64,000 nt of DNA from Phaeosaccion multiseriatum (Eukaryota > Protista > Ochrophyta, other classes): positions 496,001 to 560,000 of the forward strand of contig OZ218956.1 in NCBI GenBank assembly GCA_965112735.1. The letters run 5' to 3'. Under the pieces are notes generated by a model. The model searched no databases. It had not been told where the DNA came from and worked only from the letters and a program-made list of their open reading frames with translations. Within the stretch, counting starts at the first letter, position 1; every line of letters begins with the position of its first letter. Positions 33,968 through 54,700 of the stretch are shown here, one piece after another. Made by a program: the position numbers and the translations under genes.

Positions 33968-36790
33968 TCAGCAGTCGGCGTAGGGCATTGGTGTGAAAGG
34001 TTTCAGAGGTACACCGGCGAAGTGCCACGTCCCCTTCGTTGGGTCTTCGTCTCCGGCAGCAATAGGGCCAGGGGATGGAGGCGGTCGAATCACTTGCCCC
34101 CTGCTGGGTCGAGAGTTGTCCCCCAAGATACTACCGGGCTTCACAATGCCGCCCCCTACCAAACGACTCTCCCGTCCCAGGACGACCGAGTGGCCGACCT
34201 TGATTGGGAGTAGCTCAATCTCTCCCATTTGGATGTTGTGCGGAGTTATCGCGACACCACTCGAGATCATCGCCCCGTCGCCAATGGTAAGCAGCCCAAA
34301 CTCTGATACCCATCTTGACTCGAAGTATGCGGACATACCAACAGAGGCACCCATCAGCCTGAGCAAGAGGGGGTATAGTGGCGTGCCCAGCGTCCATCCA
34401 AATCCCAATCGATCGGCCCCCAAGGACTCCAAAAAAAGGTACATCCTATACACATCTGCTCTCCCACTCTCCGATCGAAAAGACCCTTCGCGCTGAACCT
34501 GGCCAAAGACCTTCTTGAATGCGATGGTTGAGCACCCTACGGCAGCTTCAAAGAGGAGCAGCGCCACGGGCAAGAGCAGAGTCTGCGTATCAAAGCGGCT
34601 CCAAACGGCGCGCTGTGGCCCGTCCCGCAGACTTCCACTGGCGTAAAAGTCGGTGATGGGCTGCTGGAAGAGCTCGAGGAACTCGTACGCAATGATGGCG
34701 CAGCAAAACAGCCTGGCAAGGTGCACTGCCACAACAATCACCATGAACAGAGTACGCCTTCCTGTGATTCGTCTCGCCAGCTCGTGCGTCTCCTCGTCCA
34801 CTCGGTTGCGCGTTGTGGCTGATGAGGCCCGTGCTGGCTGTCCTGTCATGATCGCGCCGTCGGGCACTTCGGTCCCCTCAGGCACGCAGGAGCAGGAGGT
34901 GACCAACACGCGACGTCCCAGGGAGGAGCCCCCCCCGATGATGGTCTTGTCCCCTGTGTTGACTCCCTCACCCACGGAGCAGCCCGTGATCACGCCGTCA
35001 CTGAACCCCACCACGGCATTCACATTCAAGCGATAAGCATGGCAAGAGTCGGAGGGAAGGGGTTCGCAACGGGTTTGAACGGTGCATGCGTACTCACCTC
35101 GTTTCTGTGTTGATTGTTGTGCCACTCCCGAAGAACGTGTTGACCCCAATGTCCAGCGTGTCAGGGTCAGAGAATCCAACACCAGCGCCGAGGCTCGCAC
35201 TCCAGCTGATGGAAGCCCCAAGAAGCTTGTACCACAGGACAATGAGCTCTGTGGAGGGGAAGAAACTCATAAAGAACCGCTGAAGAATCCCCGTCAACCG
35301 ATTGGCAGTCTCGCGGCGGGCGAGGGCGAAGGTAGACATGTCGCTCGTTCGTTGGCCCTTGCGCAGCTTGCCGACAAGCACCCACTTCAAGGCCACGCCC
35401 ACGATCACGGCAACAGTGCCAATGATTGCCAGCCAAATGAAGAGCAGGAGGATGCCAGTGTAGCGCCCGGCGCCGACGACATTGGAAGCTTCAAGCTGGA
35501 AGACTGTCGCTGCGAGAAAGCCTGGCAAGAACGTGGTCGCGATGCCGGCAAAGATCAGCACGAGCTGCATCCAGCCCTTCGATCCGAGCGCGGGTGCTCT
35601 CAGAGGGGGCTGTTGGGGCGGCATGCGCATCGCCGCTGGATTGCCCTCATACACCCGCTGTTTCGCGAGCCGCGTGCCTGAGGGTACAGTCGCTTTCACT
35701 CCGATGGTCACACCGTCCTCCAGCACTGCTCCTCCATGGACAGAGCTCGATGCGCCCAAGTCGCAGCTCGACCCTATCACCACCTGTGTGTAAGGAACAT
35801 TGGGTGAGGCATCGTCAAGACAGAGCATCGGCGGCCAGGCTGTGTGTAGACAGCGTAAGTCAGGACATGTTTGCAGATTCTGTGTTCGCATAAAAATGAT
35901 CAGTTGAGTTGGCATTGACGGGCACGATCTGTGCCTGCAAGTACTCACCTTGTCGTAGCGAATTTTCATGTCCCCAATCAGGGTTTTGGGGGATATCATG
36001 GCACTCCCGCTCACAGAGCAGTTATCGCCGATGTGCACCAAGTCAAACTCGCTCATGCGCACCTGCAAACGAGACGCGGAACGAGAGACTTTAGCAACCC
36101 CCAGCATTGATTCCGACCCTCCGCACGCAAAGTGGCTTACCCCTGTGAGATCGCAGCCGGTGCCGATGTGCGCCCCCATCATGCGGTAGAGAGGCACGAG
36201 CACGACCGAGTCCGGGAAGAGAATGGCCACCAGCGGGTAGAAGAAGTAGCCCAGGTATGTATCTACGACCCAGCTGAGAAGGTAAGGGAGGCGGCAAGTT
36301 GGGGGGGGGGCATGAAGGAAATAGCCCACATTGGTATCGTAGGAAGAGCCGCTCGGCGTCTTTGGCTACGATGCCTGCCTGAAGCCAAGAGGAGACCTCA
36401 AACCACTCATCACTCACCATCGGAAGTGGTACGTACTGTAGACCTTGTACACGCCCACTTTATATCGTCCCACAATGCTCCACTTCACCGCGGGGGCAAC
36501 CAAGAGGGACAGGACTACGAAGACCAATCCAGAGAGAAAGCTTCCGAGGAGGATCGCAAGATATTCGTTGTTGAAGGGGGTGTTGCGATTGAAGAGAGCG
36601 TCCACGCGAGGACTGCTTAGAGCTTGCTGAGTCTCAAGAAGCTTCAAGCCCTGGAAGAGGTTAAGCAGAGGGAACCCCGACACTGCGGTCCCCACACTCA
36701 ACGAAATCTTCCCAAGCAAGACGACGACGACGAAAATGATGACCAGCAAAGCCGCCCCCTGCGCTGCGGCCACAGTCGCCAACCTGAAGG
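33968..36790 (-). other. Pls/NRPS-terminal-type domain: TM segments alternating with three hexapeptide-repeat (left-handed beta-helix) units
   Basis: Three repeats of the pattern [TM, TM, K(W)xxxG, xxxxGAxIG, LxxIGD, hexapeptides, GxP]: VKWSIVGRYK/YRMMGAHIG/LVHIGDNC/YEGNPA, LKWVLVGKLR/YKLLGASIS/LDIGVN/MTGQPA, FKKVFGQV/LRLMGASVG/LLTIGDG/FAGVP. Confidence 0.85.
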
Positions 36791-39700
36791 CCGTGTAGCC
36801 CAACTCGGCCTTGCGATCAGTGGGCATGTGCGCGTCGGACGCGAGCCACTTCCGACCAGCGTTGCTGACAGCCCCGCTCGGCGCAAGCTTGTCATCTGCG
36901 GCCGCTCGAGCAGCGCCCACATGCGTCAGGCAGGCCTCGTGGACGAAGCTCGAAAATGCATCCACGGTCGGCATGTCAAAGAGCGCCGCGGGCGTCACCA
37001 CAGACAGGAGCCCGTTGACCTTGTCACCACCGCTCTCCAGATGAGCACTTGTCTGCTCGTCTCTCCCCTCGATGATGTTGACAACCCGCACTACAAACTC
37101 TGCGGCAGCCACCGAGTCGTCAGCCAGTACCTCCAGTATATCAAGATTGCGAGCATTGAGATCCAGAGCTGTCTCTGAGCCGCCAGCTGACGGGCTTCGG
37201 CTTTGACTTGCAATTTGTTGCTCGAGAGCCTCCAAAACAATACGTCGCACTGCATCCTCTCCCTTTGCAACAGGTAAAGCCCGCAACGTGCCCAACTTTC
37301 CTGGAGCTCGAGCAGTGCCACCCCCGTCCTTCACACAGGCCTCGCTGATGAAGCTCGAGAGCGCACTCAAGGTCGGCATATCGAAGATAGCGGCAGGAGT
37401 GATATGGGATCGGAGGCCCTCGCCCTCTCTACCCACATGCTCATCGCCTTCGTCTTCGATAGCGTCAACCACTCGCGTCACCATCTCTGCGACGGCGACA
37501 GAATCGTATGCCAACGCTTCCAGCACGTTCGGGTCCGGCTCACTGGCAAATCCCCCCTCCGGAGCACCGGAGACACTCTCTACGGCGCTGATGACGATGC
37601 TCCTCACGGATGCCTCTCGTTCCAACGGAGACATTGCCTGCAGCTCACTCAGCCTCCCCGGCGCATCGAGATGCTCCGCAACATCACCAGCGGCAGCAGG
37701 GAGAGCGTGGGGCAGCGGGAAAGAGCGGCGCGTCTGATATCCTGTCCATGCCCTTCTCTGCGGCTTGGCAGTAGCCACGGCGAAGTGCTGTGCCAATGCG
37801 TCATATGCTGGCGTCGGCCCCTGCAGAATGGTATGTGCATTAAATCCACCCAACCCAAACGAGTTGACCCCGGCAACGAAGCCCTCTCCATCACTGCGAC
37901 ACGCGGCCAAAGCCGTCATCTGCGTGGGGAGTACTATGGGCAGCCCCTCCAGCTTCAGCATTGGATTGATCTCCTTGAGGTGCAGGTTTGGAGGTGCTGC
38001 CCCATGGTGCAACACCAAGATAGCCTTGATGAGCTGCGCCATTCCTGAAGCTCCCTCCATGTGGCCCAGTGTCGTCTTCACAGTGCCCACCACAAGAGGA
38101 GCCTGATGGGGTCGACCGTCTGCATACACGGCCTTCAGAGCGCCTGCACAAAGCAGGGGGGGGAGAGGAGAGGAGCGGAGAGGAGAAAACATCACTTTAC
38201 GATAGGACGTGATGCCATCGCTTCGAGCTCCACTACAACGAGCAAGAGGACCAGCGCAGGCGCTGCAGGAGCTCAAGCGGGGCTAACCTACCCATTTCGA
38301 TGGCGTCTCCCGTGATGGTGGCCGTGGCGTGCGCCTCTACATAGGACACGTCACTGCCCCTGTAGCCCGCGCGAGAGAGAGCCGCAGCAGCCACGCTCTT
38401 CTGCGCCACTCCTTTGGGGGCGGACAGGGAGCTGCTGATCCCACTGTGGTTGACCTCAGTCGATTTGATGGTGGCAAGGATAACGTCGCCATCGCGCTTC
38501 GCATCCACGCAGCGCTTCAGCACCACCGCTCCGCAGCCCTCGGCTCGAACGTATCCGTTCGCTGCGGCGTCGAAAGACTTGCAGCGTCTGAGGGGAGGTG
38601 AGGAAAGGAGGTATTGGGTGGGCAGCGCAGGTAGGTAGGTCAAAGGGTTAGAGAGCGGAAAGACGCGGTCAGTCTATGCCTGTGGTAAGGTCTGACTCAC
38701 CCTTTGGACAGTAGTCCTGCCTTGTCGAGTGCTCCGAAAGCCTGGCGATGCAGCAGAAGGTTGACACCCCCCACCACCGCGCCGCTGCATTTGCCCAGCA
38801 CAAGATTGTTGCAAGCCGTGTCAAGTGCCACAAGAGCAGAGGGGCATCCTGTGTCGATGGTCTGGCAATTGCCCGTGAGGCCCAGCGTGTGCGATACGCG
38901 GCCCGCCACGCACGCTGCGCTCCCCCCGACGAGGGAGTATGCGCTTTGCTTTGCGCCGCTCTCCTGCTGAAGCATGCTCCACTCAGCTCCGGACTTGCCG
39001 ATGAAAACCCCGATATCCAGGCCATGCAGACTCTTTGGCCCCTCGTCGAAACCCGCCCTGTACAGGGCCTCGTATGCAGTCTCCAGCATGATACGCTGGC
39101 TGGGGTCGAGCGCTTCCGCCTCCGCTACAGAGATGCGGAAGAACGCATTGTCGAACTTTTCGACCCCATCGATAAAGCCACCTTTGCAGAACGGAGGGGG
39201 GCGTAGAGGGAGAGGGTGAGGGGAGAGTCAGCGGGGGCGAGAGGAACGGAGAGAGAACGAGAGGAAGAGCGAGAGGGGGGGGGGCATAGGGAGAGAGATA
39301 GAGAGGGAAGAGAGAAAGAGAGAGAAAGAGGGGGAGTGTCGAGGAAGCCCCGGCGTCGTGGGGGAAGTCGACGAGATTCACACGGCCCAGTTCGCCAATA
39401 GGGCAATCAACTTGATCAACACCTATGCAATGCCTTCACCTTGGATTCCGGCCCCCAGACCTCGCTCGGGCGGCGCTTCAGAGACGCAGTCCTGCTGGGC
39501 GCACAGCTTGGCCCAGAACGCCTCCGGGCTGTCGCAGCCCCCCGGGAAGCGGCATGACATCCCGATAATCGCAATGTCCCCGTCGGCAACTGCATGTCGC
39601 AGAGAGGCGGCAGCCGACACATTGCCGCTCGCGCTTCCCTCCTCCCCGAAGAGCACTTCCTCGACATGCGCTGCCAGCAAGGCGGGTGTGGGGAAGTCGA

Positions 39701-42700
39701 AGAACGCTGTAGTCTCAATTTCAAAGTCCCTCCCGTCCGCGCTGCTGTACAAACGGTCCTCCAGCGTCTCCGCCAGCTCGGCCATCATCACTGAGGTCAT
39801 GCCCGCCTCCATGAAGCGGTCGTCGGCGGTCAGATCCTGATTCTGCCTCACCTGCACGGCAATCGCAAGGACCTTCTCCAAGATCATCGCCAGCCTTTCC
39901 TCCCTAGTGAGTTTCTCCATAGTACGCATGGCCAGACCGCCTTCTAGCCCTTCTCTCCCATCAGGGACCTCGCCTTCGACGAAGCGACGTCTTTCCTCAT
40001 CCTCAGGAGCTGAGCGCATGCTGGCAAGTTCCGCAGGAGGAGGGTCCTGTCGGTGGTGGTTGGGGGAGAAACGGCACACGTCAGACAGTGTGAGACTCGA
40101 CGCAAAACCCTCGGCAGACGATTCCCTCACACAACGGCGGATGAAAAAAGCTGTGAAGGGCAAGTACCAAAGCACACAGATTGAAGGGGGGCAAAGGCAG
40201 GGAGAGATGGGCAAAACTGTGGAGGGCAAGTACCAAAGCACACAGATTGAAGGGGGGCAAAGGCAGGGAGAGATGGGCAAAAAAAGAGGCCTCCACTCCG
40301 GCTCACTCGCACCTGTGACATCGCAGTGAGGTCCTCGGTGAGCTCGTGCACCATGTGCAGCTCGCCGGCGTGAAGCGCCTGTCTCGTAGCCCGCCGTCGG
40401 ATCTTGCCGCTCGTGGTCTTGGGGATGGTCTTCTGCTTGACGGCCACCACCCTGGCCGCTCGGAGGCCCAGACAGGACGACACTGCGGCTTGAGCGGCCT
40501 CCACCACTGCCTGTGCTTCACCCTCTCGCTCCTGGCGGATCTCGAACACCACCTCCAGCATGCCGTCCCCTCCCGTCTCATCGGAGGAAAAGGCCGCGAT
40601 GCAGCTCTGCCGAACAGCGTCAGACGCCTCTTGCACGGCGAACTCCACGTCCTGCGGGTAGTGGTTGACCCCGTTGAAGATGATGAGGTCCTTGATGCGG
40701 CCGCAGATGTACAGCAACCCCTCTTCCACAAAGCCCACGTCGCCCGTCCGTAGGTACTGGCGAGGAGGACACAAGCTGTCTCTGCCCTCGGGCCCACCCT
40801 GGAGGGAGAGCTTCGCCTGGAAGACCTCCTTCGACAGCTCTGGCTTGCCCCAGTACCCGGCGGCGACAGAGGGGGAGGAGATCCAGATCTCTCCCGTGGT
40901 TGCTGCTTCACTAACCTCTTCCATGGTGTCGGGACTGACAATTCGAATGTCCGCAAAGTCCGCTCTCTCGTTCGGGGAGCCGACGGTGGTGAGCTCCGGC
41001 CGTGAGAAGGATCGAGTCAGAGCAGAGGCCCAGGAAACTGGCAAGCGCGGGCGAGCGAGCGAGGAAAGACGAGGAGCACATCGGAGAAAATGAGACCAAC
41101 CCTCGCACTCAAGGAGACTACACGAAAATTGGCAATCCTTCGCCACTAGGCAGCACCCTCCTTGCTCTTCACAATGACTACTCACCAAATACCACGTGCT
41201 CGGCGAGCCCATACCCGGATGAGAACCACCCGGGCCGCAAACCGAAAGGCTGGAAGGCCTCCTCGAATCTCTCCACCGTTACTCCTCGAATGGGCTCAGC
41301 CGCGTTAAGCAGAGTCACTACGGAGGACAGATCCAGCTTGGGCTCCTTGCGAGTGCCGCGCACCTTGGCCATGTAGCGGGCGCAGAGGGCGTAAGCGAAG
41401 TCGGGGGCAACGGACCACTCCACGCGGTGCCGAGAGACAAGCTCCAGCCAGAGCAGGGGCCGCCTGATGAAGCTCACTGGGGACATGTAGTGCATGGTCA
41501 TGCCTGTCAGGAAGGGGGTGAGGAGGCCGAGTACGAGGCCTATGTCCTGAGAGTTCAAGAGAGTAGGGAGGGCAGTGATTGCGGCGCGAGTGAGCAACAA
41601 CGAAGGCGAGACGAGAAGCAAAGAAAGCAGAGTCGAGGGGTGAGTGTATTGTGTGTGTGTATGGTGTACTTCATCACGCTTGCTGCTTCCGTCCTGGCCG
41701 CCTGTTTCTCTGTTTCGCCTCCCTCCCTTCGCGTGTCCTCCACGGCCACGCCCTCCTCCCTCGCGCCCCCCCCTCCCTCCTCTTTGGAAATTACATGATA
41801 CTGGGGCAACCACGAGAACCCCGTTGTTGGCACGTTATGAACAAGCTCGGTTGGTGCAGCTTTCGCGATGAGACCCCTCTTGTATGCCTCAGGCTGGTCT
41901 GAGGAAGAGTCTCTAGCTTTGTCCGAGGGCCACAGTTGGGTCATCCCCCCGGGGTGGCAGCCGATGAAGTACACGTTGGCCATGAGCGCTCCGAAGGTTA
42001 CCATGACACCCTTGGGGTCGCCGGTAGAGCCACTGGTGTACTGGAGGAGGGCCAGGTCCTCTTCAGTCAGGCTCGGCTCGTCAAAGCTCCTCGGTGATGA
42101 GGAGGACGATGAGGAGAAGAAGCTCTGGAGCAACCCCCCATCTGTAGCCTTAAAGGCGAGGGCTTTTGGCCACAGCTTGCGGGAGTCAGAGAGCGGATTG
42201 GCCGTGTCCAGCTTGCGCAGAGCTGCGATCTTGGAGTCGGTGAGGCACAGCACGGGCTTGCAGTCCGACACGATCTTGCTCATCTTCGGCAGTGACTTGG
42301 ACAGGGGAGGGACAGGTGGATAAACCATCACCGCCACCACGCCCGCTCTCAGACAGCCCAGGAAGGCTGCGAAGAAGTGCAGACCCGGCTCGTAGCACAG
42401 CACCACCATAGCCCCCTTGGGCACGCCCCACTCCTCGCGCAGCATGCAGGAAATGTTGCCCGCCTAGGGAAGAAGACGGGGTGGGAGAATGATTGTTTAG
42501 CTTGCACCTTAATGATCGCATAGAATGCAGGACTGCAGCAGAAGCAAGCAACTGAGACCAGGAGAAGGACATCACCAAGTACGGAATCCTTGCTCGCTTA
42601 CCTCGCCCCACATGCGCTTGAAGCTGTACCTCTCCGCCTGCTTGCCCTTTCCATCATACCAAAAGGCGAAGGGATTGTCGCCGAGCTCAGTCGCGATCTC

Positions 42701-45700
42701 CTGCGCCCTCGCCAGCAAAGGAGTGAGAGAAGAAGAACTGAGTCTGGGCAGAGACTTCATGTCCTCCTCCCCCTCATCGTCTAGAGATCCTCCCGTCCCA
42801 GGCGCTGAGGCCTTGCGCAGCTTGAAGGCATGCATCCCTCCATTTGCTGGGCCCCCCTTCCTGCTGCTGGGAGGGGGCGCTGTCTCGACACCCTCAGACT
42901 GGTCCTTCTCCGCAGCCTGCGAAACCTGCACAACGCCGGCCAGGATGTCGTGAACGTCTGCTTTTGAGGACGTAGACGTGGCCAGGCCGCGAGGCTGAAG
43001 GCGTGAGACGAGGCCCTGTTCCTGCTGCTGCTGCTGCTGCTGCTGCTGCACGTCAGATGGCATGCGCGCCGGAAATCGGGACTGTCCCGCAAGCATTCGA
43101 CCCTTCATTCCGTCGGGAGTGATCGTGCCTTCGAACTTTTTCCAGCCACTGAGGATACAGTGCGCATTTGTGCCTCCAACGCCGTACGAGTGAACAGCCG
43201 CAAGAGGGCCCTTTCGCGATGGCGACGCAGTGAGAGCAGCGGGCCTCCTGGCGAGCATGATGCGGGTGCCTTGGAGATGCCGAACAATGCGGGGACTGAC
43301 CACCTCCTGGTGCAGATTGCGAGGCACGAAGCCTTTCCCCAATACCAAGAGCGCCTTGATGAGCTGGCCCATGCCGGAAGCTCCCTCCATGTGGCCTATG
43401 TTGGTCTTGACTGCGCCCACAACGAGGGGCACCATCGATTTTGCCCCGTTATCTAGAGATGCCTCTGCGTACACGGCCTTAATCGCGTTCATCTCGATAA
43501 TATCCCCCGCCATGGTTCCCGTCCCGTGCGCCTCGATGTACGTGACGTCGCGAGGGGAAGCACCGGCGTCTGCCAAGGCCTGCTTCATTACGTCCTCTTG
43601 CGCGGAGCCGCTGGGCTCCCCCATTTTCTTCATTTCACCGTTGTGATTTGTAGCACATCCCTCGATGACGCCAATGATGCGGTCATTGTTTGCCTCGGCG
43701 TCTTCGAGCCGCTTCAGAACGATCACTCCACAGCCCTCCGCCCTGACGTAGCCGTCCCCAGACGCCCCGAAAGAGGCCGTGCGCCTGGCAAAGCGATTGA
43801 AGGGACGGCAGCTCAAGGTGAAGCAAGGTTGCACGAAAGAGGACAGAGGAAGAAGAAACAAAATGGGGCTTCGCAAGCGACCAAAACTTACCCTTTGTCA
43901 GAGAGGAGGCCGCTCCTATGGATAGTCGAAAAGGAGCTGGGGTGCAGGAAGAGGTTGACGCCTCCAACCAGCGCGGCGTCACACTTTGCATGCTGCAGCT
44001 TCTCACATGCGGCCTCGAGCGCCACCAGGGACGAAGAGCACGCCGTGTCCACTGCAAAACAAGTGCCCGAGAAGCCCAGAGCATGACTGACCCGCCCAGC
44101 GAGGACAGAAGCGCTTCCTCCAGTGAGGGAGAACTCGTCAGTCTCAACACCGCAGCCTTTTTGACGTGCACCCCAGTCGTGAGAGCTAGAGCCGATGAAC
44201 ACCCCTGTTCTCGAACCCTTCATACAACGGGGTCCGTTGAGAGCGTAGCCCGCTCGAGAGAGAGCCTCGTACGATACTTCCAGCAGGATGCGCTGGTTAG
44301 GGTCCATTGCCTTTGCCTCCGCTGCCGATATGCCGAAAAAGGCGTTGTCGAACAGGTCCACGTCCTCAAGACAGGCCCCAAACCTCACTCCCTGCTCCTC
44401 GCTCATGGTGAATGGCAAAGGCTTGACGCTGTCCGTCTCCTGCAAGAGGTTGTCCCAGAATGAGTCCGGGTCATCTGCTCTGCTCGGGAACCGGCACGCC
44501 ATTCCGACCACGGCGACACGGGTGCTCAACTTTGTCGAGTGCGGAGTGGGAGGGGGCGGAACTGGTGCCACAGGCGGCTCTACCGCTGCGAGCAGCTGTT
44601 TGGCCAGCCACTCTGCCAAGGTCGCGGGAGTAGGATGGGCGTATATCACGCTGTTGCTCATGCCTACGCCGAAATGAGAAGCCACGCGATGCCGGAACTC
44701 CTCAAGGGACAAGGAGTCAAGGCCAGCCTCCGTCAGGGAAGTGGTGCTGTCCAGCGCTTCGGCACCCTCCCCGATGCACTCCTTGGCGATGTCCATGACT
44801 GCAAGGCTCACCGCGTATCTTCGGTCTCCGGTGGACAGCTCCAACAGCTCCTCGCGCACTGATTTATCGGCCGCGATGTTGCTCGACGAGCCTGCTGCAG
44901 CTGTTGAGACAAGCCCTGACAGAAGGGGTGTACTGCGGCACGCCCCCATGCTCTCTGCAAACTTGGCCCAGTCCATCCCAGGCAGGACGGCCACATCGCC
45001 CAAATACGCTGACGGCATCGCAGCGGCATCTAAGGCAGCCATGCCCAGCTCAGCTGACACTGTGCCCACACCCGCAAGCTCCAACCGCTTTTGAACGATA
45101 TCGAGCTGGGCGGCCATACCAACGTCAGCCCACGGCCCCCACTGCAATGATGTCCCTGCGAGCCCGAGGTATCGCCTGTGCCGCATCAGCCCATCCACAG
45201 CCGCGTTCGCCGCAGCGTAGTTGGCCTGTCCAGCGTTACCCAGTACTCCGGCCATGGATGTGAAGCAAAAGAAGAAGTCAAGGCCAGGAGCGCGCCCCTC
45301 CTCCTTCGCCCAAGCCAACGAAAGCTCGTGCAAGTTCACCGCCCCCTGCACCTTGGGTCGGAACACCCTCACCACGCTCTCCGCCGTTTGCTCTCCGAGC
45401 AGCTTATCATCCAACACCCCGGCAGCATGCACCACACCGCGGACGGGGGGCAGCAGAGGCAGCACGCCCCCTAGGCAAGTCCGAAGTGCCTCAGCATCAG
45501 CAACATCACAAGTAGGAGTAAGGATATTTAGGTCTACGACGTTCCGAAGCTGCTGCCACTGTTCTGTCATGCTCTCGGCGACCTTCCCACTCCTCGACAG
45601 CAGCACCAAGTGACGAGCGCCCCTCGACGCGAGGTGCTGGGCCGTCACGAGGCCGAGAGCCCCCAGACCGCCGCTGATGACGTACGTACCATCGGACACG

Positions 45701-48700
45701 ACTGGCGCACCGTACGAGGGGTTGGTCAGCACCACCTTGCCGATGTGCTTCGCTTGGCTCATGTATACCATGGCCTTCTGAGTATCCTCCCTCATGTCAA
45801 ATGGTATGGTCGGTAAGGGCTTCACATTGCCAGACATGCAGTCATCAGCAAGACGCTGCAGCCCGCCGCTGATCCAGCCCGGCTCGCCGGCCGAAAAGTC
45901 AGACTCAACCATGCTATCCAATGCCAGCAGCTCGTACCTCACATCGGGCCGGGCAGTGCGCACCTGGTCGTGACTCCACACGCCTCGCTTGCCAATCTCG
46001 ACAAATACACCACCCTCGCTGAGCATGGCCAGCGAGAAGGGAATGTAGTCTTCACTCAGAGAGTTGAGCACCAAGTCCACCTTCATCTCACCCATGGACT
46101 GCTTGAAAGCCTCCGCGTCTCGCGATGACGCAATGTGCTTCACTCCCAAGCTCCGGAGGAAGTCATGCTTCACAGCAGCACCAGCAGTAGCGTACACCTC
46201 TGCGCCGACCCGCTGAGCATACTGCACGGCAGCAAGGCCCACACCGCCCGATGCGGCATGAATCAACACCTTCTGTCCAGCCTTGAGGTCGTGGAAGGCC
46301 TTCACTACCGTCAAGCACACGGTTGGAAGTGCAGCGGCCTGCTCGAAGCTCAGCGCCGCCGGCATCACGGCCAGGCACGCGTCCCCCGTCACCAGATGGC
46401 TGCGCAAACATCCTCCGTCTGCGAAGCCATATACGTTATCGCCGACACGGAAACGCGAGCTTCCTCCCACACTGATCACCTCCCCGGCGAACTCGGAGCA
46501 GGGATCTCCAGGGTCGCCAGGGTACAGGTCCAGTACATTCAGCACGTCCCGGAAGTTCAGGCCAACAGCTCTCACTACCACCTCCACATAGCTACCGGTC
46601 GGGTCGAGAGGCCGATGTTTGCCAACATCAACATCATCGCGAAGGAGAAAGGCATTGGCTATACTACCTCTTGTCTTAAGCTCCAGGGAAAACGGAAGAG
46701 TCAAAGCTGGGTGTGCAAGCTGAGGCATCCAGCACTGACCATCGCGTACCCACACATATTCTGTGGTGCCAGGGAAGGCCAAGCCTAAGGTAAGCTCGCT
46801 GTCTAGGGACTCCTTGTCGCTCAGGTCCACCACACTAATCTGCATGTAAGGGTGCTCCATCCTCGCAGTCCGCACCAGCCCAGTCACCCAGCTGTAACGC
46901 CAGTCCTCGCCGCTTTCGACGCCTCTCGTCAAGACCGTCAGCGGCACACTCGACGCAGTGGACAGGCTCCTGAGTAGCGATAACAGAGCGTAGACCGCTC
47001 GTGCTTGGGGGCTTCCTTCTGTGTCTTCTTCGTCAGCTCCGGGTATCAGCACGTACAAGACGCGAGCCCACTCGTCTTCTCCAAGAAGAAGAGCACCATC
47101 ATCCACGGAGGCGTCCATCCCCCCATACTGAGTGTGTACGTGCACGTTCTCCGGAACACAGCGCCGCACTGCAGCAATGATTCCAGTCTCTCCCTCCCTC
47201 TCGTGCTGTGGAATAATCACCAGCCACTTCTGTGGCGCCGCTGCCTCAGCAGGGTCAGTATCACTACAAGGGGCCGCCTCCTGTGTAGACGGTTCAGCGG
47301 CCTTCCACTCCAATGCGTACATTGCACGACGAACGGGGCTGACAGGTACAAAGTTCCTCGCCCGCTGCACGCGGAAGCCCCGCATCTCCACGAGCACCTC
47401 TTCGCTGTCGAAGTCTGCAATGCGGATGTCAAACTTGACGCTGTCTGCCACTGACTGGACCTCACTCAGCTTCGTGTGCACCCACACGTTCTTTCCCGTC
47501 ATGGAGGCGGAAAGCACCACCTCGTCAAAGCCAGCAGGTAGGAATGGAGAGTTCCCTCCCTCCTTGAGCAGCTTCCTTGGCAGCGCTTGCATGATGGTAT
47601 GGGTAGCATTGTCCAGCACCGCGGGGTGCAGAGCAAAGCCCTTCATCTCCCACGGCTCGCACAGCTCCTCATCCATGGCACACACGACCGACAGAACCTC
47701 TCCGTCCCCTCCGTACATGTGGCGGGTCCGCTGAAAGCGGGGGCCGTACTGGAAGCCGGCGTCTGCGAAAGACTTGTAGAGCTCACTCGATACGTCCTGC
47801 TCGCCAACTCTAGCTCGAATGGATTCCACGTGCAGCGAAGCACGCGCCATGGTTCGCTCCTTGATAGACACGTGCCTCATTCTTGCCGTGATGCCCTTGT
47901 CGCCCGTGGCACCTCCGAAAAACTGCATGCTTCCATCTGCCGCGTGAAGGGCGCTCATCCCGGCACAGACCATTGTATGGCGGTTTTGCGCGTGCTCCGT
48001 GCCGACCTGCTGGAAACCCTCAATCTCCAGTGGAACCACAAAGCTGGCTCCTTGCAGGACTACCTGCTGCTCCACTCCGAGCTGTCGTCCTCCTAGAGCA
48101 GCGACGACGCCCACTTCAATGTACGTCACCCCCGGAATGATCACCGTGTTGTTGACGGCATGGTCCTTGAGAAGGTCCTTGAGGTGAGGGGAGAAGGGGC
48201 TGGGGAGGCGCATTCCGTCTCCCTCCTGGACTACCTCGCCACTCGGCATAAACGCCAGCGGAGGCTTGTACCAAGGAAATGATCGGCGAGTCGGATAAAG
48301 CTCACGATGCTCCGGCCCCACTATACTGCCCAGGGCTGCTCCAAATGAATCCTCGGAGTTCTTCCCGAGTGTGAGGGAGGAGATCCACGCCAGCCCCTCG
48401 CGACGCTCGCACTTGGCTCCCATGCTGCTCAGCACAGGGTTGGGACCCACCTCAACAATGCTCAGGTCAGCCCCCCTCCCGTCTCCCATCCAGTGCTCCA
48501 CCAGCGTGTGGATGCCTTCTGCGAACAGCACAGGCGACAGCATGTGTTGCACCCAATACGTCGCCTGCGTCACCTCCTCCCCTCTCACCACCTCACCCGT
48601 CACGTTGGACACCAGAGGAATGCGTGGGGCGCTGAATGACACCTGCCTCAGAGCCTCCTCCAGCGCACGTACAGCGGGCTCCATCAGAGGAGAGTGGAAG

Positions 48701-51700
48701 GCGTGCGACACCTCCAGGGCCTTGCAGCCCACCCCATCAGCCGTGAGCTTCTCCACCACCTTGTCCACAGCGCTGCGAGCTCCAGAGATCACGCTCGCGC
48801 TCGGTCCATTCGACGACGCCAGCACCACCTCGCCTGCCCCCCCCGCAGCGTCGATGCTTGCCAAAGTCGCCTCCTTGCCTGCCCTCACTGCAAACATCAC
48901 TCCCTCGCCCTCGGGGCAGGCCTGCATGGCGGCTCCTCTCATGGCGGACAGCATCAGCCCGTCCTCCAGCGACATGACACCGGCCACGCACGCCGCCACT
49001 ACCTCGCCCAGGCTGTGGCCCATCACCATGGAAGGCTCCACGCCCTCCGACTTCCACATCTCACACAGGGCGTACTCCAGCACAAACAGGCACGGCTGGC
49101 AGTAGCGTGTCTCCTTCAGCAGCGCTTGTGCAGTCTCCTCCTCCTCCTCCTCCTCCCCGTCCTCAGCGACCGCTGGGTACATGAGCTCCACCACAGACTT
49201 GTCCAGCCAGGCCCGCTCCATAAGCAGCGTGCTGCACCGCTGCACGCATTCGCGGAACACGCCCTCCTTCTCGTACAGCTCCCTGCCCATGCCCACGTAC
49301 TGCGAGCCCTGCCCTGTGAACAAGAACGTCACCGGCAAACTCTTCTTGCTTTGCTGTCCATCCAGCTGCAGCAAGGCTTCGCTCTCGCTCTCCGCTACCA
49401 TCGTCGGTTCGAAGCTGCTGAGCACCGCATGGGCGTTGGCTCCTCCCGCGCCGAAGGAGCTGACAGCAGCAGTGCGCCTCTCCCCATCCCTGGCACTTAG
49501 TGGCACCATGGCAGACGGCAAAGTCACCGGAAAGTCATCCAAACGAAGCTCCGGATTGAGCTTCTTCATGTGGAGATTGGGGGGAGCACATCCATGCTGA
49601 AGGACCAGCAGAGCTTTGATGAGGCCAGCGATTCCGGACGCAGCCTCTAGATGCCCGATATTGGTCTTCACCGCCCCAACTACCAGGGGCCGATCTTCCT
49701 CGCGGCCATTGCCATACACGGCCCTCAAAGCACTCATCTCGATGGGATCGCCGAGAGACGTCCCGGTGCCGTGCGCCTCCACGTAATCAACCTCCATACC
49801 GCTCAAGCCGGCCTCCGCCAGTGCCTGCTCCATCAGACGCTGCTGAGCAGTAGGGCTTGGGGCAGTATAGCGCAAACTTCTCCCGTTGTGGTTCGCAGCG
49901 CAGCCATTGACGACAGCGAGGATGTGGTCGCCATTGGCCTGTGCATCGTCGAGTCGCCTCAGCACCACGGCGCCGCAGCCCTCACCTCGAACATAACCGT
50001 TGGCCGCAGCGTCGAACGTCTTGCAGCGCCTGACAATGAGGAATTGTGGGTTTGCAAAAGTGAAGAGCAGAGAAGAGGTAATCCATCAGCAACAGGGGTC
50101 TTTCAGACAGCTTGTGCCGTTGATCTGGCTCTCATAGCGGCCTCAAGAACAAGTTCCCACCCACACAAAAGAGACACGCACTTACCAGTCAAGACTCAGG
50201 AAACCTCCTTCGGCGAGGGTCTCGAACGTTTGTGTACCCAGCAGCAAGTTGACGCCTCCCACCAAGGCGATGTCACACTTGCCCAGCCGCAAGCTGCTGC
50301 AGGCCCCTTCCAGTGCCACCAAAGACGACGAGCACGCCGTGTCGACACTCATGCTCGGCCCTCCGAGGCCCAGCACGTAAGATATCCGATTTGCCGGACT
50401 CGCATTGGACATACCCATGACGGAGTATGCACCCTTGTTCGCATCGTCTACCACTGAGCCCCACTCGCTGCCGGACATACCCACGAACACACCGGTGTTG
50501 CTGCCATGTAGTGTATCCTTGCGGTATCCCGCCCTGTGCAGAGCCTCGTACCCCACCTCCAGCATGACGCGCTGATGAGGGTCCATGGCACCCGCCTCGG
50601 CCGCAGAGATGCCGAAGAAGGTGTTGTCAAAAGCCTCCACTCCATCAATGAAGCCCCCTTGCCACTGCTTCTGACCCTCATCGGCCCAGCGTCCGACAGG
50701 GCTGGCTCCAATACAGTCTGTCCCTGCACAGAGCATAGCCCAGAAATCCTCGGGATTATGAACCCCTCCAGGGAAGCGACAGGCGATCCCGACGACGGCC
50801 AGCGGCGCCCTTGAGTCAGTGCGGTGCGCTTCAGCAGCGATTGCCGCAGAGCGATTGCTAGAGGGTTCCTCTGTCTCTCCAAGCACCTCCGCTTCGATCC
50901 ACACTGCCAGCGCCGCTACCGTGGGATATGCGAAGAGCATGTCAGTGGTAGCTACAACCCCGAAGCGAGCCTGTAGCCGGCCGCGCAGCTCCACTGTTGA
51001 CAAAGAGTCAAGACCTGCTTCCATCAAAGGCGTGTTGGCGTCTAGCTCTTCGGCACCATCCCCAAGGAGGTCCTTGGTCATATCAAGCACCGCCAATCGC
51101 ACTGATTGCTGTCGTTCACCAAGGGGCAGTCTCAAGAGCGCCTCGCGCACTTCATTGTTGAGTTCGGTGTTGCTGGACGCGCCTGCTGCTGTTGAGACAA
51201 GCCCTGACAGCAGGAACGAGCCGCGGGACGCACCCATGCTCTCTGCAAACTTGCCCCAGTCCATTCCAGGCAGGACGGCCACATCACCCAAATACGCTGA
51301 CGGCATCGCAGCGGCATCTAAGGCAGCCATGCCCAGCTCAGCTGACACCGTGCCCACACCCGCCAGCTCCAACTGCTTTTGAACGATATCGAGCTGGGCG
51401 GCCATACCCACATCAGCCCACGGCCCCCACTGCAATGACGTCCCTGCGAGCCCGAGGTGTCGCCTGTGCCGCATCAGCCCATCCACAGCCGCGTTCGCCG
51501 CAGCGTAGTTGGCCTGTCCAGCGTTACCCAGTACTCCGGCCATTGATGTGAAGCAAAAGAAGAAGTCAAGGCCACGAGTGCGCCCCTCCTCCTTCGCCCA
51601 AGCCAACGAAAGCTCGTGCAAGTTCACCGCCCCCTGCACCTTGGGTCGGAACACCCTCACCACGCTCTCCGCCGTTTGCTCTCCGAGCAGCTTATCATCC

Positions 51701-54700
51701 AACACCCCGGCAGCATGCACCACGCCGCGGACGGGGGGCAGCAGAGGCAGCACGCCCCCCAGGCAAGTCCGAAGTGCCTCAGCATCAGCAACATCACAAG
51801 TAGGAGTAAGGATATTTAGGTCCACGACGTTCCGAAGCTGCTGCCACTGTTCTGTCATGCTCTCGGCGACCTTCCCACTCCTCGACAGCAGCACCAAGTG
51901 ACGAGCGCCCCTCGACGCGAGGTGCTGGGCCGTCACGAGGCCGAGGGCCCCCAGACCGCCGCTGATGACGTACGTGCCATCGGACACCACTGGCACACCA
52001 TACGAGGGGTTGGTCAGCACCACCTTGCCCATGTGCTTCGCTTGGCTCATGAATGCCATGGCCTTCTGAGTATCCTCCCTCATGTCAAATGGTATGGTCG
52101 GTAAGGGCTTCACATTGCCAGACATGCAGTCTTCAGCCAGACGCTGCAGCCCGCCACTGATCCAGCCCGGCTCGCCGGCCGAAAAGTCAGACTCAACCAT
52201 GCTATCCAATGCCAGCAGCTCGTACCTCACATCGGGCCGGGCAGTGCGCACCTGGTCGTGACTCCACACGCCTCGCTTGCCAATCTCGACAAATATACCA
52301 CCCTCGCTGAGCATGGCCAGCGAGAAGGGAATGTAGTCTTCACTCAGAGAGTTGAGCACCACGTCCACCTTCATCTCACCCATGGACTGCTTGAACGCCT
52401 CCGCGTCTCGCGATGAAGCAATGTGCTTCACTCCCAAGCTCCGGAGGAAGTCATGCTTCACAGCAGCACCAGCAGTAGCGTACACCTCTGCGCCGACCCG
52501 CTGAGCATACTGCACGGCGGCAAGGCCCACACCGCCAGATGCGGCATGAATCAACACCTTCTGTCCAGCCTTGAGGTCGTGGAAGGCCTTCACTACCGTC
52601 AAGCACACGGTTGGAAGTGCAGCGGCCTGCTCGAAGCTCAGCGCCGCCGGCATCATGGCCAGGCACGCGTCCCCCGTCACCAGATGGCTGCGCAAACATC
52701 CTCCGTCTGCGAAGCCATATATGTTATCGCTGACACGAAAACGCGAGCTTCCTCCCACACTGATCACCTCCCCGGCGAACTCGGAGCAGGGATCTCCAGG
52801 GTCGCCAGGGTACAGGTCCAGTACATTCAGCACGTCCCGGAAGTTCAGGCCAACAGCTCTCACTACCACCTCCACATAGCTACCGGTCGGGTCGAGAGGC
52901 CGATGTTTGCCAACATCAACATCATCGCGAAGGAGAAAGGCATTGGCTATACTACTTCTTGCCTTAAGCTCCAGGGAAAACGGAAGAGTCAAAGCTGGGT
53001 GTGCAAGCTGAGGCATCCAGCACTGACCATCGCGTACCCACACATATTCTGTGGTGCCAGGGAAGGCCAAGCCTAAGGTAAGCTCGCTGTCTAGGGACTC
53101 CTTGTCGCTCAGGTCCAACACACTAATCTGCATGTAAGGGTGCTCCATCCTCGCAGTCCGCACCAGACCTGTAACCCAGCTGTGACGCCAGTCCTCGCCG
53201 CTTTCGACGCCTCTCGTCAAGACCGTCAGCGGTACATTCGACGCAGTGGACAGGCTCCTGAGTAGCGATAACAGAGCGTAGACCGCTCGTGCTTGGGGGC
53301 TTCCTTCTGTGTCTTCTTCGTCAGCTCCGGGTATCAGCACGTACAAGACGCGAGCCCACTCGTCTTCTCCAAGAAGAAGAGCACCATCATCCACGGAGGC
53401 GTCCATCCCCCCATACTGAGTGTGTACGTGCACGTTCTCCGGAACACAGCGCCGCACTGCAGCAATGATTCCAGTCTCTCCCTCCCTCTCGTGCTGTGGA
53501 ATAATCACCAGCCACTTCTGTGGCGCCGCTGCCTCAGCAGGGTCAGTATCACTACCAGGGGCCTCCTCCTGTGTAGACGGTTCAGCGGCCTGCCACTCCA
53601 ATGCGTACATTGCACGACGAACGGGGCTGACACGTACAAAGTTCCTCGCCCGCTGCACGCGGAAGCCCCGCATCTCCACGAGCACGTCTTCGCTGTCGAA
53701 GTCTGCAATGCGGATGTCAAACTTGACGCTGTCCGCCACTGACTGGACCTCACTCAGCTTCGTGTGCACCCACACGTTCTTTCCCGTCATGGAGGCGGAA
53801 AGCACCACCTCGTCAAAGCCAGCAGGTAGGAATGGAGAGTTCCCTCCCTCCTTGAGCAGCTTCCTTGGCAGCGCTTGCATGATGGTATGGGTAGCATTGT
53901 CCAGCACCGCGGGGTGCAGAGCAAAGCCCTTCATCTCCCACGGCTCGCACAGCTCCTCATCCATGGCACACACGACCGACAGAACCTCTCCGTCCCCTCC
54001 GTACATGTGGCGGGTCCGCTGAAAGCGGGGGCCGTACTGGAAGCCGGCACCTGCCAAAGACTTGTAGAGCCCACTCGACACGTCCTGCTCGCCAACTCTA
54101 GCTCGAATGGATTCCACGTGCAGCGAAGCACGCGCCATGGTTCGCTCCTTGATAGACACGTGCCTCATTCTTGCCGTGATGCCCTTGTCGCCCGTGGCAC
54201 CTCCGAAAAACTGCATGCTTCCATCTGCCGCGTGAAGGGCGCTCATCCCGGCACAGACCATTGTATGGCGGTTTTGCGCGTGCTCCGTGCCGACCTGCTG
54301 GAAACCCTCAATCTCCAGTGGAACCACAAAGCTGGCTCCTTGCAGGACTACCTGCTGCTCCACTCCGAGCTGTCGTCCTCCTAGAGCAGCGACGACGCCC
54401 ACTTCAATGTACGTCACCCCCGGAATGATCACCGTGTTGTTGACGGCATGGTCCTTGAGAAGGTCCTTGAGGTGAGGGGAGAAGGGGCTGGGGAGGCGCA
54501 TTCCGTCTCCCTCCTGGACTACCTCGCCACTCGGCATAAACGCCAGCGGAGGCTTGTACCAAGGAAATGATCGGCGAGTCGGATAAAGCTCACGATGCTC
54601 CGGCCCCACTATACTGCCCAGGGCTGCTCCAAATGAATCCTCGGAGTTCTTCCCGAGTGTGAGGGAGGAGATCCACGCCAGCCCCTCGCGACGCTCGCAC

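What the first reader, a model, noticed from the sequence alone, without database searches (positions are those of the whole stretch)
39650..44525. FAAL-ACP loading unit embedded mid-chain, straight after an intact KS with no AT/ACP
The C-terminal half of a catalytically intact KS and the N-terminus of the FAAL lie in the SAME exon (43784-42602), joined by a ~140-aa poly-Q/Ser-rich linker, so the fusion does not depend on my splice model. A starter-type domain inside an assembly line suggests convergent synthesis: the KS holds the upstream polyketide chain while the FAAL loads a second acyl group on the next ACP, and the two are joined. This is conceptually like FadD32/Pks13 condensation of two long chains, or an ester-forming step. 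Alternatively it records a fusion of two ancestral genes (a reducing PKS plus a FAAL-ACP-KS-ACP2-Pls unit).
Basis: partly seen in the sequence, partly recalled or inferred. Interest (0 to 1): 0.8.

Follow-up and report, generated by a model that had tools for sequence, protein, structure and literature searches.

The report
Second loading unit inside algal PKS
In this alga's giant polyketide synthase gene, a fatty-acid-activating loading unit really does sit in frame in the middle of the protein, because a complete smaller enzyme (which also exists as separate genes in the same genome) was fused behind a multi-module synthase; what the two halves make together is unknown.

Summary
Observation confirmed. 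On the minus strand, exon 43784-42602 holds the C-half of a ketosynthase, KS(a), with its Cys-His-His triad intact. The same exon continues through a ~112-codon low-complexity linker into the first ~40 residues of a FAAL-type adenylation domain. No AT or ACP lies between them.

A second locus (G000:C2:4.36-4.39 Mb) has the same junction. Across the two copies:
- KS(a) and the FAAL are under purifying selection (dN/dS 0.19-0.24).
- The linker evolves neutrally (dN/dS 0.96), yet all six of its indels are multiples of three.
- So read-through from KS(a) into the FAAL is selected.

The downstream unit, FAAL-ACP-KS-ACP-Pls-type membrane domain, also exists as at least five stand-alone genes in this genome. 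The scan had already noted such genes on other DNA. The upstream part has its own Cys-to-Ser KS loader.

Convergent joining of two chains remains possible but untested.

Caveats:
- No RNA evidence could be obtained.
- As assembled, this copy has a TAG and two homopolymer frameshifts far upstream. The second copy looks intact.
- I found no other KS-then-FAAL example in the searches run.

Verdict: a new variant of known FAAL-primed, Pls-terminated algal PKSs.

The parts
57165..63443 (-). Module M3: KS-AT-DH-ER-KR-ACP. It is fully reducing. A 1-nt C-homopolymer deletion near 58024 shifts the frame in the KR.
   Evidence: Local tblastn domain map; Pfam on the sister module; comparison with M4.
50878..57089 (-). 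Module M4: KS-AT-DH-ER-KR-ACP, 97-100% identical to M3 and M5. A 1-nt C-homopolymer deletion near 55871 sits in the KS C-half.
44584..50802 (-). Module M5: KS-AT-DH-ER-KR-ACP. This is the last complete module, and its ACP lies in the same ORF as the KS(a) N-half.
   Evidence: Pfam on ORF 43888-49968.
43892..44523 (-). KS(a) N-half, with the active-site Cys (DTACSSS). It is continuous with M5 in one ORF.
43785..43891 (-). 107-nt GT-AG intron inside KS(a). All other KS domains examined in this gene are interrupted at the same KS position.
   Evidence: ORF maps.
43058..43784 (-). KS(a) C-half (EAHGTGT, NIGHME) plus part of the post-KS linker domain. No AT follows.
   Evidence: Pfam; motifs; dN/dS 0.235 against the C2 paralog.
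42722..43057 (-). Low-complexity linker of 112 codons with a CAG/poly-Q run. Its sequence is unconstrained but its frame is kept.
   Evidence: dN/dS 0.96. Six nucleotide-level indels of 3, 3, 27, 18, 12 and 18; coding-like GC by codon position; 3% of shuffles stay open.
42602..42721 (-). FAAL N-terminus, in the same exon as the KS(a) C-half.
   Evidence: Alignment to N-termini of FAAL proteins; 74-82% identical to the paralogs; dN/dS 0.24.
41795..42463 (-). FAAL exon carrying the ATP-binding motif YTSGSTGDPKG.
   Evidence: Pfam AMP-binding, E 1e-26.
41186..41546 (-). FAAL exon ending in the GYGLAE motif.
   Evidence: NCBIfam FAAL families.
40313..41037 (-). FAAL exon with the hinge and C-terminal subdomain (TGD, GRIKD, PKTTSGKIRR).
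   Evidence: NCBIfam PRK12476, E 3e-43; PDB FAALs 7R7E, FadD32 and 3KXW.
39648..40046 (-). ACP1, the carrier next to the FAAL. Its serine is kept (GMTSV).
   Evidence: Pfam PP-binding; alignment to the ACP of P0063.
37773..39617 (-). KS2, a second AT-less KS split over several exons. Motifs are DTGCPSA, EAHATAT and TLGHME.
36873..37667 (-). Tandem carriers ACP2 (37293-37667) and ACP3 (36873-37292). ACP3 occurs only in the two fused genes.
33971..36872 (-). Pls/PosA-type terminal region: transmembrane stretches alternating with left-handed beta-helix repeats.
   Evidence: TIGR02353 hits, E 4e-13 and 7e-24, and Hexapep hits.

Best explanation
This is one gene made by an old, selected, in-frame fusion.

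The upstream part is a complete cis-AT reducing PKS. It starts with a Cys-to-Ser KS plus ACP loader just beyond the window. Five modules follow, and it ends in an AT-less KS, KS(a), of the kind that in this genome normally sits last before the release domain.

The downstream part is a complete small synthase: FAAL-ACP1-KS2-ACP-(ACP)-Pls-type membrane transferase. This unit also works as stand-alone genes.

Inferred mechanism: a two-entry assembly line.
- The chain made from acetate reaches KS(a). KS(a) condenses it onto the next carrier downstream, ACP1, which a neighbouring or free-standing AT has charged with malonate.
- The FAAL can independently load a free fatty or other carboxylic acid on the same ACP1.
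- Either chain then passes to KS2 for one more AT-less extension on ACP2/ACP3.
- The membrane-embedded Pls-type domain releases it by transfer to an acceptor.

What is shown: the architecture, the fusion, and the selection on KS(a), the FAAL and the reading frame. What is inferred: the route of the chains, the source of malonate and the product.
For: The junction is open, and GT-AG splicing keeps the frame from M5 to ACP1.

A second fused locus has the same order of domains, and I saw no broken domain in it.

Selection between the two fused copies:
- dN/dS is 0.235 for KS(a), 0.185 for the FAAL and 0.179 for KS2.
- The linker has dN/dS 0.96, but all six of its indels are multiples of three and its codon-position GC looks coding.
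- The FAAL evolves no faster in fused genes than in stand-alone genes. dN to the C4 outgroup is 0.205-0.207 for fused and 0.213-0.215 for stand-alone.

Stand-alone cassettes with their own starts exist.

The N-terminal KS has Ser in place of Cys in both fused genes.

KS(a) groups with the KS2 clade (support 94/94), not with the module KSs. Its best non-self matches (54-58%) lie in ~880-aa ORFs that also carry beta-helix hits, so they are last-KS-before-release domains.

Of 25 FAAL matches in the genome, only these two loci have a KS match within 3 kb on the N-terminal side.

The FAAL is 76-89% identical to FAALs that sit at the start of other PKS genes here, so it probably loads a starter-type acid.
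Against: There is no transcript or protein evidence. The only runs holding the locus are genomic DNA.

As assembled, this copy has an in-frame TAG in the AT of module 2 (C7:562327-562329). It also has two 1-nt homopolymer deletions, in M3 and M4. If these are real, this copy cannot be read from its first KS to its end.

The colinear route needs ACP1 to be malonylated by an AT that I did not identify. It also leaves the extra ACP3 of the fused genes unexplained.

The fused status does not follow the tree of the cassette. The C7 cassette is nearest the C6 stand-alone copies, and the C2 fused cassette is nearest its stand-alone neighbour on C2. The history therefore involves recombination or partial duplications.
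Confidence: 0.45

Rival explanations
1. Convergent synthesis. The two entries are used at the same time. KS(a) holds the PKS-made chain and the FAAL loads a second acid on ACP1 for KS2. Each chain gets its own tail carrier (ACP2, ACP3). The two chains are then joined, either by a Claisen step of the FadD32/Pks13 or NocH/NocG kind, or by the Pls-type domain placing both on one acceptor.
For: Both KSs are intact and constrained. The FAAL is fully constrained. A second tail ACP occurs only in the two fused genes, so there is one KS and one carrier more than in the stand-alone cassette. FAAL plus ACP-KS-ACP with release by acyl transfer mirrors FadD32/Pks13. A KS joining two FAAL-ACP-borne acyl chains is reported for nocuolin A (PMC11837247).
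Against: There is no AT or carboxylase to make a carboxylated nucleophile as in Pks13. KS(a) would have to reach carriers about 1,300 residues away, past ACP1. Tandem ACPs are common and may only raise throughput. Nothing in the sequence shows a joining step.
Confidence: 0.25
2. Two proteins from one locus. An internal promoter or start (for example at the conserved Met of the DMKSLP island just before the FAAL) makes the cassette on its own. The upstream PKS, which in this copy may be a pseudogene, is made separately or not at all.
For: Stand-alone cassettes are the commoner form. A Met-containing island is conserved in both linkers. This copy has a TAG and two frameshifts upstream as assembled. 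There are no RNA data.
Against: Frame-preserving indels and the absence of stops in a neutrally evolving linker argue for translation across it in both copies. KS(a) would end a protein with no stop codon of its own. Both frameshifts are single-base losses in C6 runs inside otherwise identical repeats, the usual long-read artefact. I saw no broken domain in the C2 copy.
Confidence: 0.15
3. Off-load and re-load, as with AmbG. The PKS chain leaves the enzyme as a free acid, perhaps after tailoring. The embedded FAAL re-activates it onto ACP1 for the last extension.
For: AmbG is a FAAL-ACP that acts in the middle of a type I PKS pathway and channels a free-acid intermediate back onto the line (PMC11837247, PMC12391302). 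PKAL-1 does a similar job in nematodes (bioRxiv 10.1101/2021.05.28.446193).
Against: No hydrolase or thioesterase lies between M5 and the FAAL. An intact, constrained KS(a) would have no role. The same FAAL type works as a plain N-terminal loader in about 20 other genes here.
Confidence: 0.1
4. FAAL as a stand-in for the missing AT. KS(a)-FAAL-ACP1 is one module in which the FAAL loads a malonate-type dicarboxylic extender.
For: The FAAL sits exactly where an AT sits in a KS-AT-ACP module.
Against: It is 76-89% identical to FAALs at the N-termini of other PKS genes in the genome and of the stand-alone cassettes, where it must load a starter. Its family matches are long-chain FAALs.
Confidence: 0.05

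Closest known systems
Stand-alone algal FAAL-ACP-KS-ACP-Pls-type synthases, and PKSs with an N-terminal adenylation domain and an LbH domain (noted in Chrysophaeum taylorii, PMC10366177; also paralogs in this genome)
   Same: The same cassette, 60-94% identical domain by domain to paralogs at C6, C2 and C4. The pelagophyte paper also reports AT-less KS modules, an adenylation-type loader and LbH domains.
   Different: There the adenylation domain is always N-terminal. Here it follows a KS in the same exon, behind a PKS that already has its own loader. The fused genes also have one more ACP.
AmbG, the FAAL-ACP didomain of ambruticin biosynthesis
   Same: A FAAL-ACP that acts in the middle of a type I PKS pathway rather than at its start (PMC11837247, PMC12391302).
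   Different: AmbG is a separate protein that re-loads a released free acid. Here the unit is fused in cis directly after an intact KS, and no release step is evident.
FadD32 / Pks13 mycolic acid condensation system
   Same: A FAAL loads an acyl chain onto the ACP in front of a KS. The product on a C-terminal ACP is released by transfer to an acceptor. The KS and ACP pieces score well against the Pks13 model.
   Different: Pks13 has an AT that supplies a carboxylated second chain, and a thioesterase-type transferase. FadD32 is a separate protein. The scores are far below the family cut-off (177 against 2100 bits).
Epsilon-poly-L-lysine synthetase (Pls/PosA family, TIGR02353)
   Same: A C-terminal region of transmembrane stretches alternating with beta-helix domains, placed after a carrier domain.
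   Different: Pls has an amino-acid adenylation domain and no KS. The scores here are below cut-off exon by exon. Its acceptor and any polymerising activity are unknown.
Cyanobacterial olefin synthase and other FAAL-ACP-primed PKSs
   Same: FAAL-ACP followed by a KS. The best solved-structure match to the FAAL C-half is 7R7E, deposited as 'Polyketide synthase'.
   Different: That FAAL is at the N-terminus and the KS has its own AT.

Membership tests
Fatty acyl-AMP ligase (FAAL) domain | Adenylate-forming core motifs (ATP-binding P-loop, GYGxxE, TGD hinge, GRxKD, catalytic Lys) | tested here: met
   YTSGSTGDPKG, GYGLAE, TGD, GRIKD and PKTTSGKIRR are seen in the exon translations and alignments.
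Fatty acyl-AMP ligase (FAAL) domain | Closer to FAALs than to acyl-CoA ligases or amino-acid A domains | tested here: met
   For the two C-terminal exons the best NCBIfam models are FAAL families: PRK12476 (3e-43), PRK05850, FadD32 and FadD21. The first exon's top match is an NRPS/PKS model. The best PDB matches are FAALs: 7R7E, FadD32, 3KXW and FadD23. No score reaches a whole-protein cut-off, because the exons were searched singly.
Fatty acyl-AMP ligase (FAAL) domain | FAAL-specific insertion that blocks CoA use; transfer to holo-ACP only | tested here: inconclusive
   A segment between GYGLAE and the hinge aligns with the same segment of FAAL relatives. It spans an intron, and I did not map it onto a structure. 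The chemistry is not testable here.
Elongating type I PKS ketosynthase | Cys-His-His catalytic triad | tested here: met
   KS(a) has DTACSSS, EAHGTGT and NIGHME. KS2 has DTGCPSA, EAHATAT and TLGHME. The first KS of the gene has Ser for Cys.
Canonical cis-AT PKS module | KS followed by its own AT and ACP | tested here: not met
   No AT or ACP lies between KS(a) and the FAAL, and no AT follows KS2.
FadD32/Pks13-type two-chain condensation system | An AT that loads a carboxylated acyl chain on the C-terminal ACP, plus a TE-type transferase | tested here: not met
   Pfam, NCBIfam and the local domain map find no AT and no thioesterase downstream of M5.
Pls/PosA family terminal domain (TIGR02353) | Match to the family model; repeated transmembrane pairs with beta-helix domains after a carrier | tested here: inconclusive
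   Two exon ORFs hit TIGR02353 at 4e-13 and 7e-24, that is 48 and 84 bits against a cut-off of 423. Hexapeptide repeats and hydrophobic stretches are visible in the translations. The joined protein was not searched.
Mid-pathway FAAL-ACP re-loader (AmbG type) | An upstream release of a free-acid intermediate that the FAAL re-activates | not testable with these tools
   No hydrolase domain was found next to it. Whether a free acid is formed needs chemistry.

The most novel reading that the evidence does not exclude
A single polypeptide that builds one acyl chain from acetate, imports a second acid through an internal FAAL, and joins the two. The joining would be either a carbon-carbon condensation or double acylation of one acceptor by the membrane Pls-type domain. 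That would make it a eukaryotic, all-in-one counterpart of the FadD32/Pks13 logic, with a new release chemistry.
Probability: 0.25. Interest if true: 0.85.

Novelty: new variant of a known kind. Interest (0 to 1): 0.6.

Why it matters
PKS assembly lines are read as one loader followed by extension modules. A loader fused in cis behind a working KS breaks that rule, giving a natural enzyme with two entry points that share one exit.

If the two inputs are joined, it would show how a eukaryote makes two-chain lipids on one protein. If they are alternatives, it is a natural example of module grafting that still keeps every part under selection. That would be useful for engineering hybrid synthases.

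It also ties into a very large, unstudied family in this alga: more than 110 KS matches and about 25 FAAL copies, most in genes that end in a beta-helix or Pls-type domain. The products of this family are unknown.

Tried and rejected
RNA evidence. The one run search returned only four DNA runs of one sample. Laying them confirmed the DNA but gave no splice, start or end data.

Relatives with a KS in front of the FAAL:
- A full-library search with the FAAL C-half found 30,309 relatives. In the best 150, none has a PKS domain before the FAAL by local domain BLAST. The internal FAALs among them are second copies in FAAL-FAAL proteins.
- A word search with the junction exon gave only KS-only fragments, with 40-69% coverage in all but one 33%-identity hit and no AMP-binding domain.
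- A search with the KS(a) N-half gave bacterial PKSs. The two hits carrying an AMP-binding domain have it at the N-terminus.
- Two Chrysoparadoxa contigs show FAALs at gene starts, with unrelated genes upstream.
- These searches are length-limited or capped, so absence elsewhere is not proven.

FAAL as an AT surrogate was considered and largely rejected, because the FAAL is 76-89% identical to N-terminal loader FAALs.

A vestigial FAAL was rejected, because its dN/dS and its distance to the outgroup equal those of stand-alone copies.

Their layout is therefore inferred from coordinates only.

No complex or structure prediction was run, as it would not have told the rival routes apart.

The joined spliced protein was never sent to a search tool. 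Exons were searched singly by reference. Exon pieces were concatenated only inside local scripts, for the trees and the dN/dS estimates.

Full report
WHAT IS THERE

The window is GC-rich eukaryotic DNA (about 60% GC). Earlier notes of the scan call the organism a stramenopile alga. It lies at G000:C7:496001-560000. A very large gene runs on the minus strand.

Pfam on its open frames shows repeated KS-AT-DH-ER-KR-ACP modules. The last of these ORFs (43888-49968) ends in the N-half of a further ketosynthase, called KS(a) here.

The next open frame (43897-42575) holds the rest of that KS, a poly-Q/Ser/Pro stretch and then the start of an AMP-binding domain. Downstream come, in order:
- three more AMP-binding exons;
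- an ACP;
- a second KS (KS2), split by introns;
- two carrier domains;
- transmembrane and hexapeptide-repeat sequence that hits the Pls/PosA terminal-domain model TIGR02353.

CHECK OF THE OBSERVATION

They also give frame-keeping introns at 43891-43785, 42601-42464, 41794-41547, 41185-41038 and 40312-40047. The joins restore consensus sequence across each junction when compared with FAAL proteins of other protists.

KS(a) has the full Cys-His-His triad. Pfam finds no AT or ACP between KS(a) and the adenylation domain.

The adenylation domain is a FAAL by its best family and structure matches. ACP1 keeps its serine.

Genomic contigs from four runs of one sample agree with the window on both sides of the CAG repeat. 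The only discrepancy is a single-base gap in a G6 run, in one run.

IS THE READ-THROUGH REAL?

No RNA run held the locus, so the argument is comparative.

A second locus, G000:C2:4362001-4392000, has the same order: first KS, ACP, two modules, KS(a), linker, FAAL, ACP, KS2, two ACPs, Pls-type domain. KS(a), linker and FAAL start again lie in one open frame.

Between the two copies:
- The KS(a) C-half has dN/dS 0.235.
- The FAAL start has dN/dS 0.24.
- The linker has dN/dS 0.96.
- A nucleotide-level alignment of the linker, made without translation, has six indels of 3, 3, 27, 18, 12 and 18 bases.
- The linker keeps the codon-position GC pattern of exons, not the flat GC of introns.
- Only about 3% of shuffles of either linker are open.

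So the linker is free to change in sequence but not in frame. That is what a translated tether between two working parts should look like.

WHERE THE DOWNSTREAM HALF COMES FROM

Searching the genome with the terminal domain found close paralogs. A local domain map of the fetched regions shows FAAL-ACP-KS-ACP-Pls-type units with no PKS module in front of them:
- three in tandem on C6;
- one at C2:2.45-2.48 Mb;
- one at C4:3.52-3.55 Mb;
- a decayed one on C1, whose KS has lost its catalytic residues.

Two of these have a Met-started first exon bounded by an upstream stop. Other readers of this scan had already described such stand-alone genes on other pieces of this genome. I found them independently before reading those notes.

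Simpler FAAL-ACP-Pls-type proteins of about 1,400 residues are the nearest relatives outside this genome, for example in the diatom Seminavis robusta. PKSs with an N-terminal adenylation domain, AT-less modules and LbH domains have been noted, uncharacterised, in the pelagophyte Chrysophaeum taylorii (PMC10366177).

WHERE THE UPSTREAM HALF STARTS

Beyond the window's end the gene continues through:
- a KR-only module;
- a fully reducing module;
- an ACP;
- a first KS whose active-site Cys is Ser in both fused genes, with both His kept.

That is a loader-type KS. Upstream of it is low-complexity, non-coding-looking DNA. The assembly line therefore already has its own loader, and the FAAL-ACP is a second loader.

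KINSHIP OF KS(a)

In a maximum-likelihood tree of 28 KS rows (six gappy rows left out), the two KS(a) copies form a clade (100/100). That clade is sister to the KS2 clade (94/94) and separate from the module KSs (100/98).

In the whole genome, the best non-self matches of the KS(a) C-half (54-58%) lie in open frames of 877-901 residues. Those frames also carry the weak beta-helix matches found with the terminal domain, so they are the last KS before a release domain in other PKS genes.

KS(a) is therefore by descent a terminal, AT-less KS. AT-lessness of the last KS appears to be usual in this genome. What is unusual is that a FAAL follows instead of a carrier.

HOW COMMON IT IS

The genome has at least 25 FAAL matches at 52-89% identity (21 of them at 76-89%) and more than 110 KS matches. 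By coordinates, most FAALs sit at the upstream end of a run of KSs that ends in a beta-helix match. About a dozen other runs begin with a KS like the first KS of this gene. Only the C7 and C2 loci have a KS match within 3 kb on the N-terminal side of a FAAL.

Outside the genome I found no KS-then-FAAL protein. These searches are capped or length-limited, so this is not proof of absence.

IS THE EMBEDDED FAAL STILL USED?

Its dN/dS is 0.185 between the fused copies, 0.20-0.22 between fused and stand-alone copies, and 0.22 between stand-alone copies. Its non-synonymous distance to the C4 outgroup is the same in fused genes (0.205, 0.207) as in stand-alone genes (0.213, 0.215). All core motifs are present. 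It is not a relic.

HISTORY

The cassette of the C7 gene is closest to the C6 stand-alone copies. The cassette of the C2 fused gene is closest to its stand-alone neighbour on C2. Yet KS(a), the linker islands and the extra carrier ACP3 are shared only by the two fused genes. ACP3 is a roughly 50%-identical duplicate of the cassette's own ACP and has no other relatives in the genome.

The simplest account has three steps:
1. One old fusion.
2. Duplication of the fused gene.
3. Later partial duplications or gene conversion between fused and stand-alone copies.
The order of these events is not resolved.

MECHANISM

The following are shown:
- two loaders;
- two intact AT-less KSs in series;
- three downstream carriers;
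- one membrane Pls-type exit;
- selection on all of these parts.

The following is inferred. By colinearity, the carrier after KS(a) is ACP1. The plainest route is PKS chain to KS(a), condensation onto malonyl-ACP1, hand-over to KS2, a last extension on ACP2/3, and release by acyl transfer. The FAAL offers a second way onto ACP1. I give this 0.45.

The rivals are:
It explains the extra carrier, but it lacks a source of an activated nucleophile.
- Separate proteins from an internal start, 0.15.
- An AmbG-like release and re-load (PMC11837247, PMC12391302), 0.10. No releasing domain is present.
- The FAAL loading an extender in place of an AT, 0.05. This is unlikely because the same FAAL type is the N-terminal loader elsewhere in the genome.

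CAVEATS

As assembled, the C7 copy carries an in-frame TAG where the sister modules have CAG, in the AT of module 2 (C7:562327-562329, beyond the window). It also carries two single-base deletions in C6 runs within otherwise identical repeats.

The deletions look like long-read homopolymer errors. The TAG may be real.

I saw no broken domain in the C2 copy.

COMPARISON WITH WHAT IS KNOWN, AND VERDICT

The cassette is a member of an already noticed but unstudied algal class.

FAAL-ACP units acting in mid-pathway are known only as separate proteins: AmbG, with PKAL-1 as a functional analogue (bioRxiv 10.1101/2021.05.28.446193).

FadD32/Pks13 shares the logic of FAAL, ACP-KS-ACP and release by transfer. 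But its defining AT and thioesterase are absent here, so this is not a member of that family.

A FAAL-ACP fused in cis directly behind an intact KS of a PKS that has its own loader is, as far as these searches reach, a new variant.

Noticed in passing
G000:C7:562327-562329 (2,327-2,329 bases beyond the window's end), minus strand: There is an in-frame TAG in the AT domain of module 2 of this same gene, where the sister modules have CAG (Gln). If it is real, this copy cannot be translated from its first KS to its end.
   Followed up: partly
window about 58024 and about 55871, minus strand: Two single-base deletions in C6 runs, one in the KR of M3 and one in the KS C-half of M4. The flanks are 100% identical to the neighbouring module, so these are probably long-read homopolymer assembly errors.
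   Followed up: partly
window 44584-63443: Three fully reducing modules repeat with a period of about 6.29 kb at 97-100% identity. This points to very recent tandem duplication or ongoing homogenisation inside one gene.
   Followed up: partly
G000:C7:570200-573800 (beyond the window) and G000:C2:4362600-4365000: The first KS of both fused genes has Ser in place of the active-site Cys (NTASSSS, NTASSSA) with both His kept, and an ACP follows with no AT. This is a decarboxylating-loader-like KS. About ten more KSs of this type are matched elsewhere in the genome.
   Followed up: partly
whole genome G000: The PKS complement is very large. There are more than 110 KS matches and at least 25 FAAL matches (21 of them 76-89% identical to this one), mostly in long runs that end in a beta-helix or Pls-type match.
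   Followed up: partly
G000:C6:660001-700000 (L011, L018, L012, L019): Three FAAL-ACP-KS-ACP-Pls cassettes lie in tandem. Two of them are preceded by an isolated fragment of a FAAL C-terminal subdomain about 340 bases upstream of their FAAL start. These look like remnants of unequal recombination.
   Followed up: no
G000:C1:6975001-6995000 (L016, L023): A divergent cassette paralog whose KS has lost its catalytic residues (DDASSSA, EADAEGS). It is either a decayed copy or a non-condensing variant.
   Followed up: no
window 39648-39902: ACP1 of this gene has diverged much faster than its neighbours. It is 60-63% identical to the paralogs, against 78-94% for the flanking FAAL and KS2. Its dN/dS against the C6 copies is 0.60. 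The C2 fused copy does not show this.
   Followed up: partly
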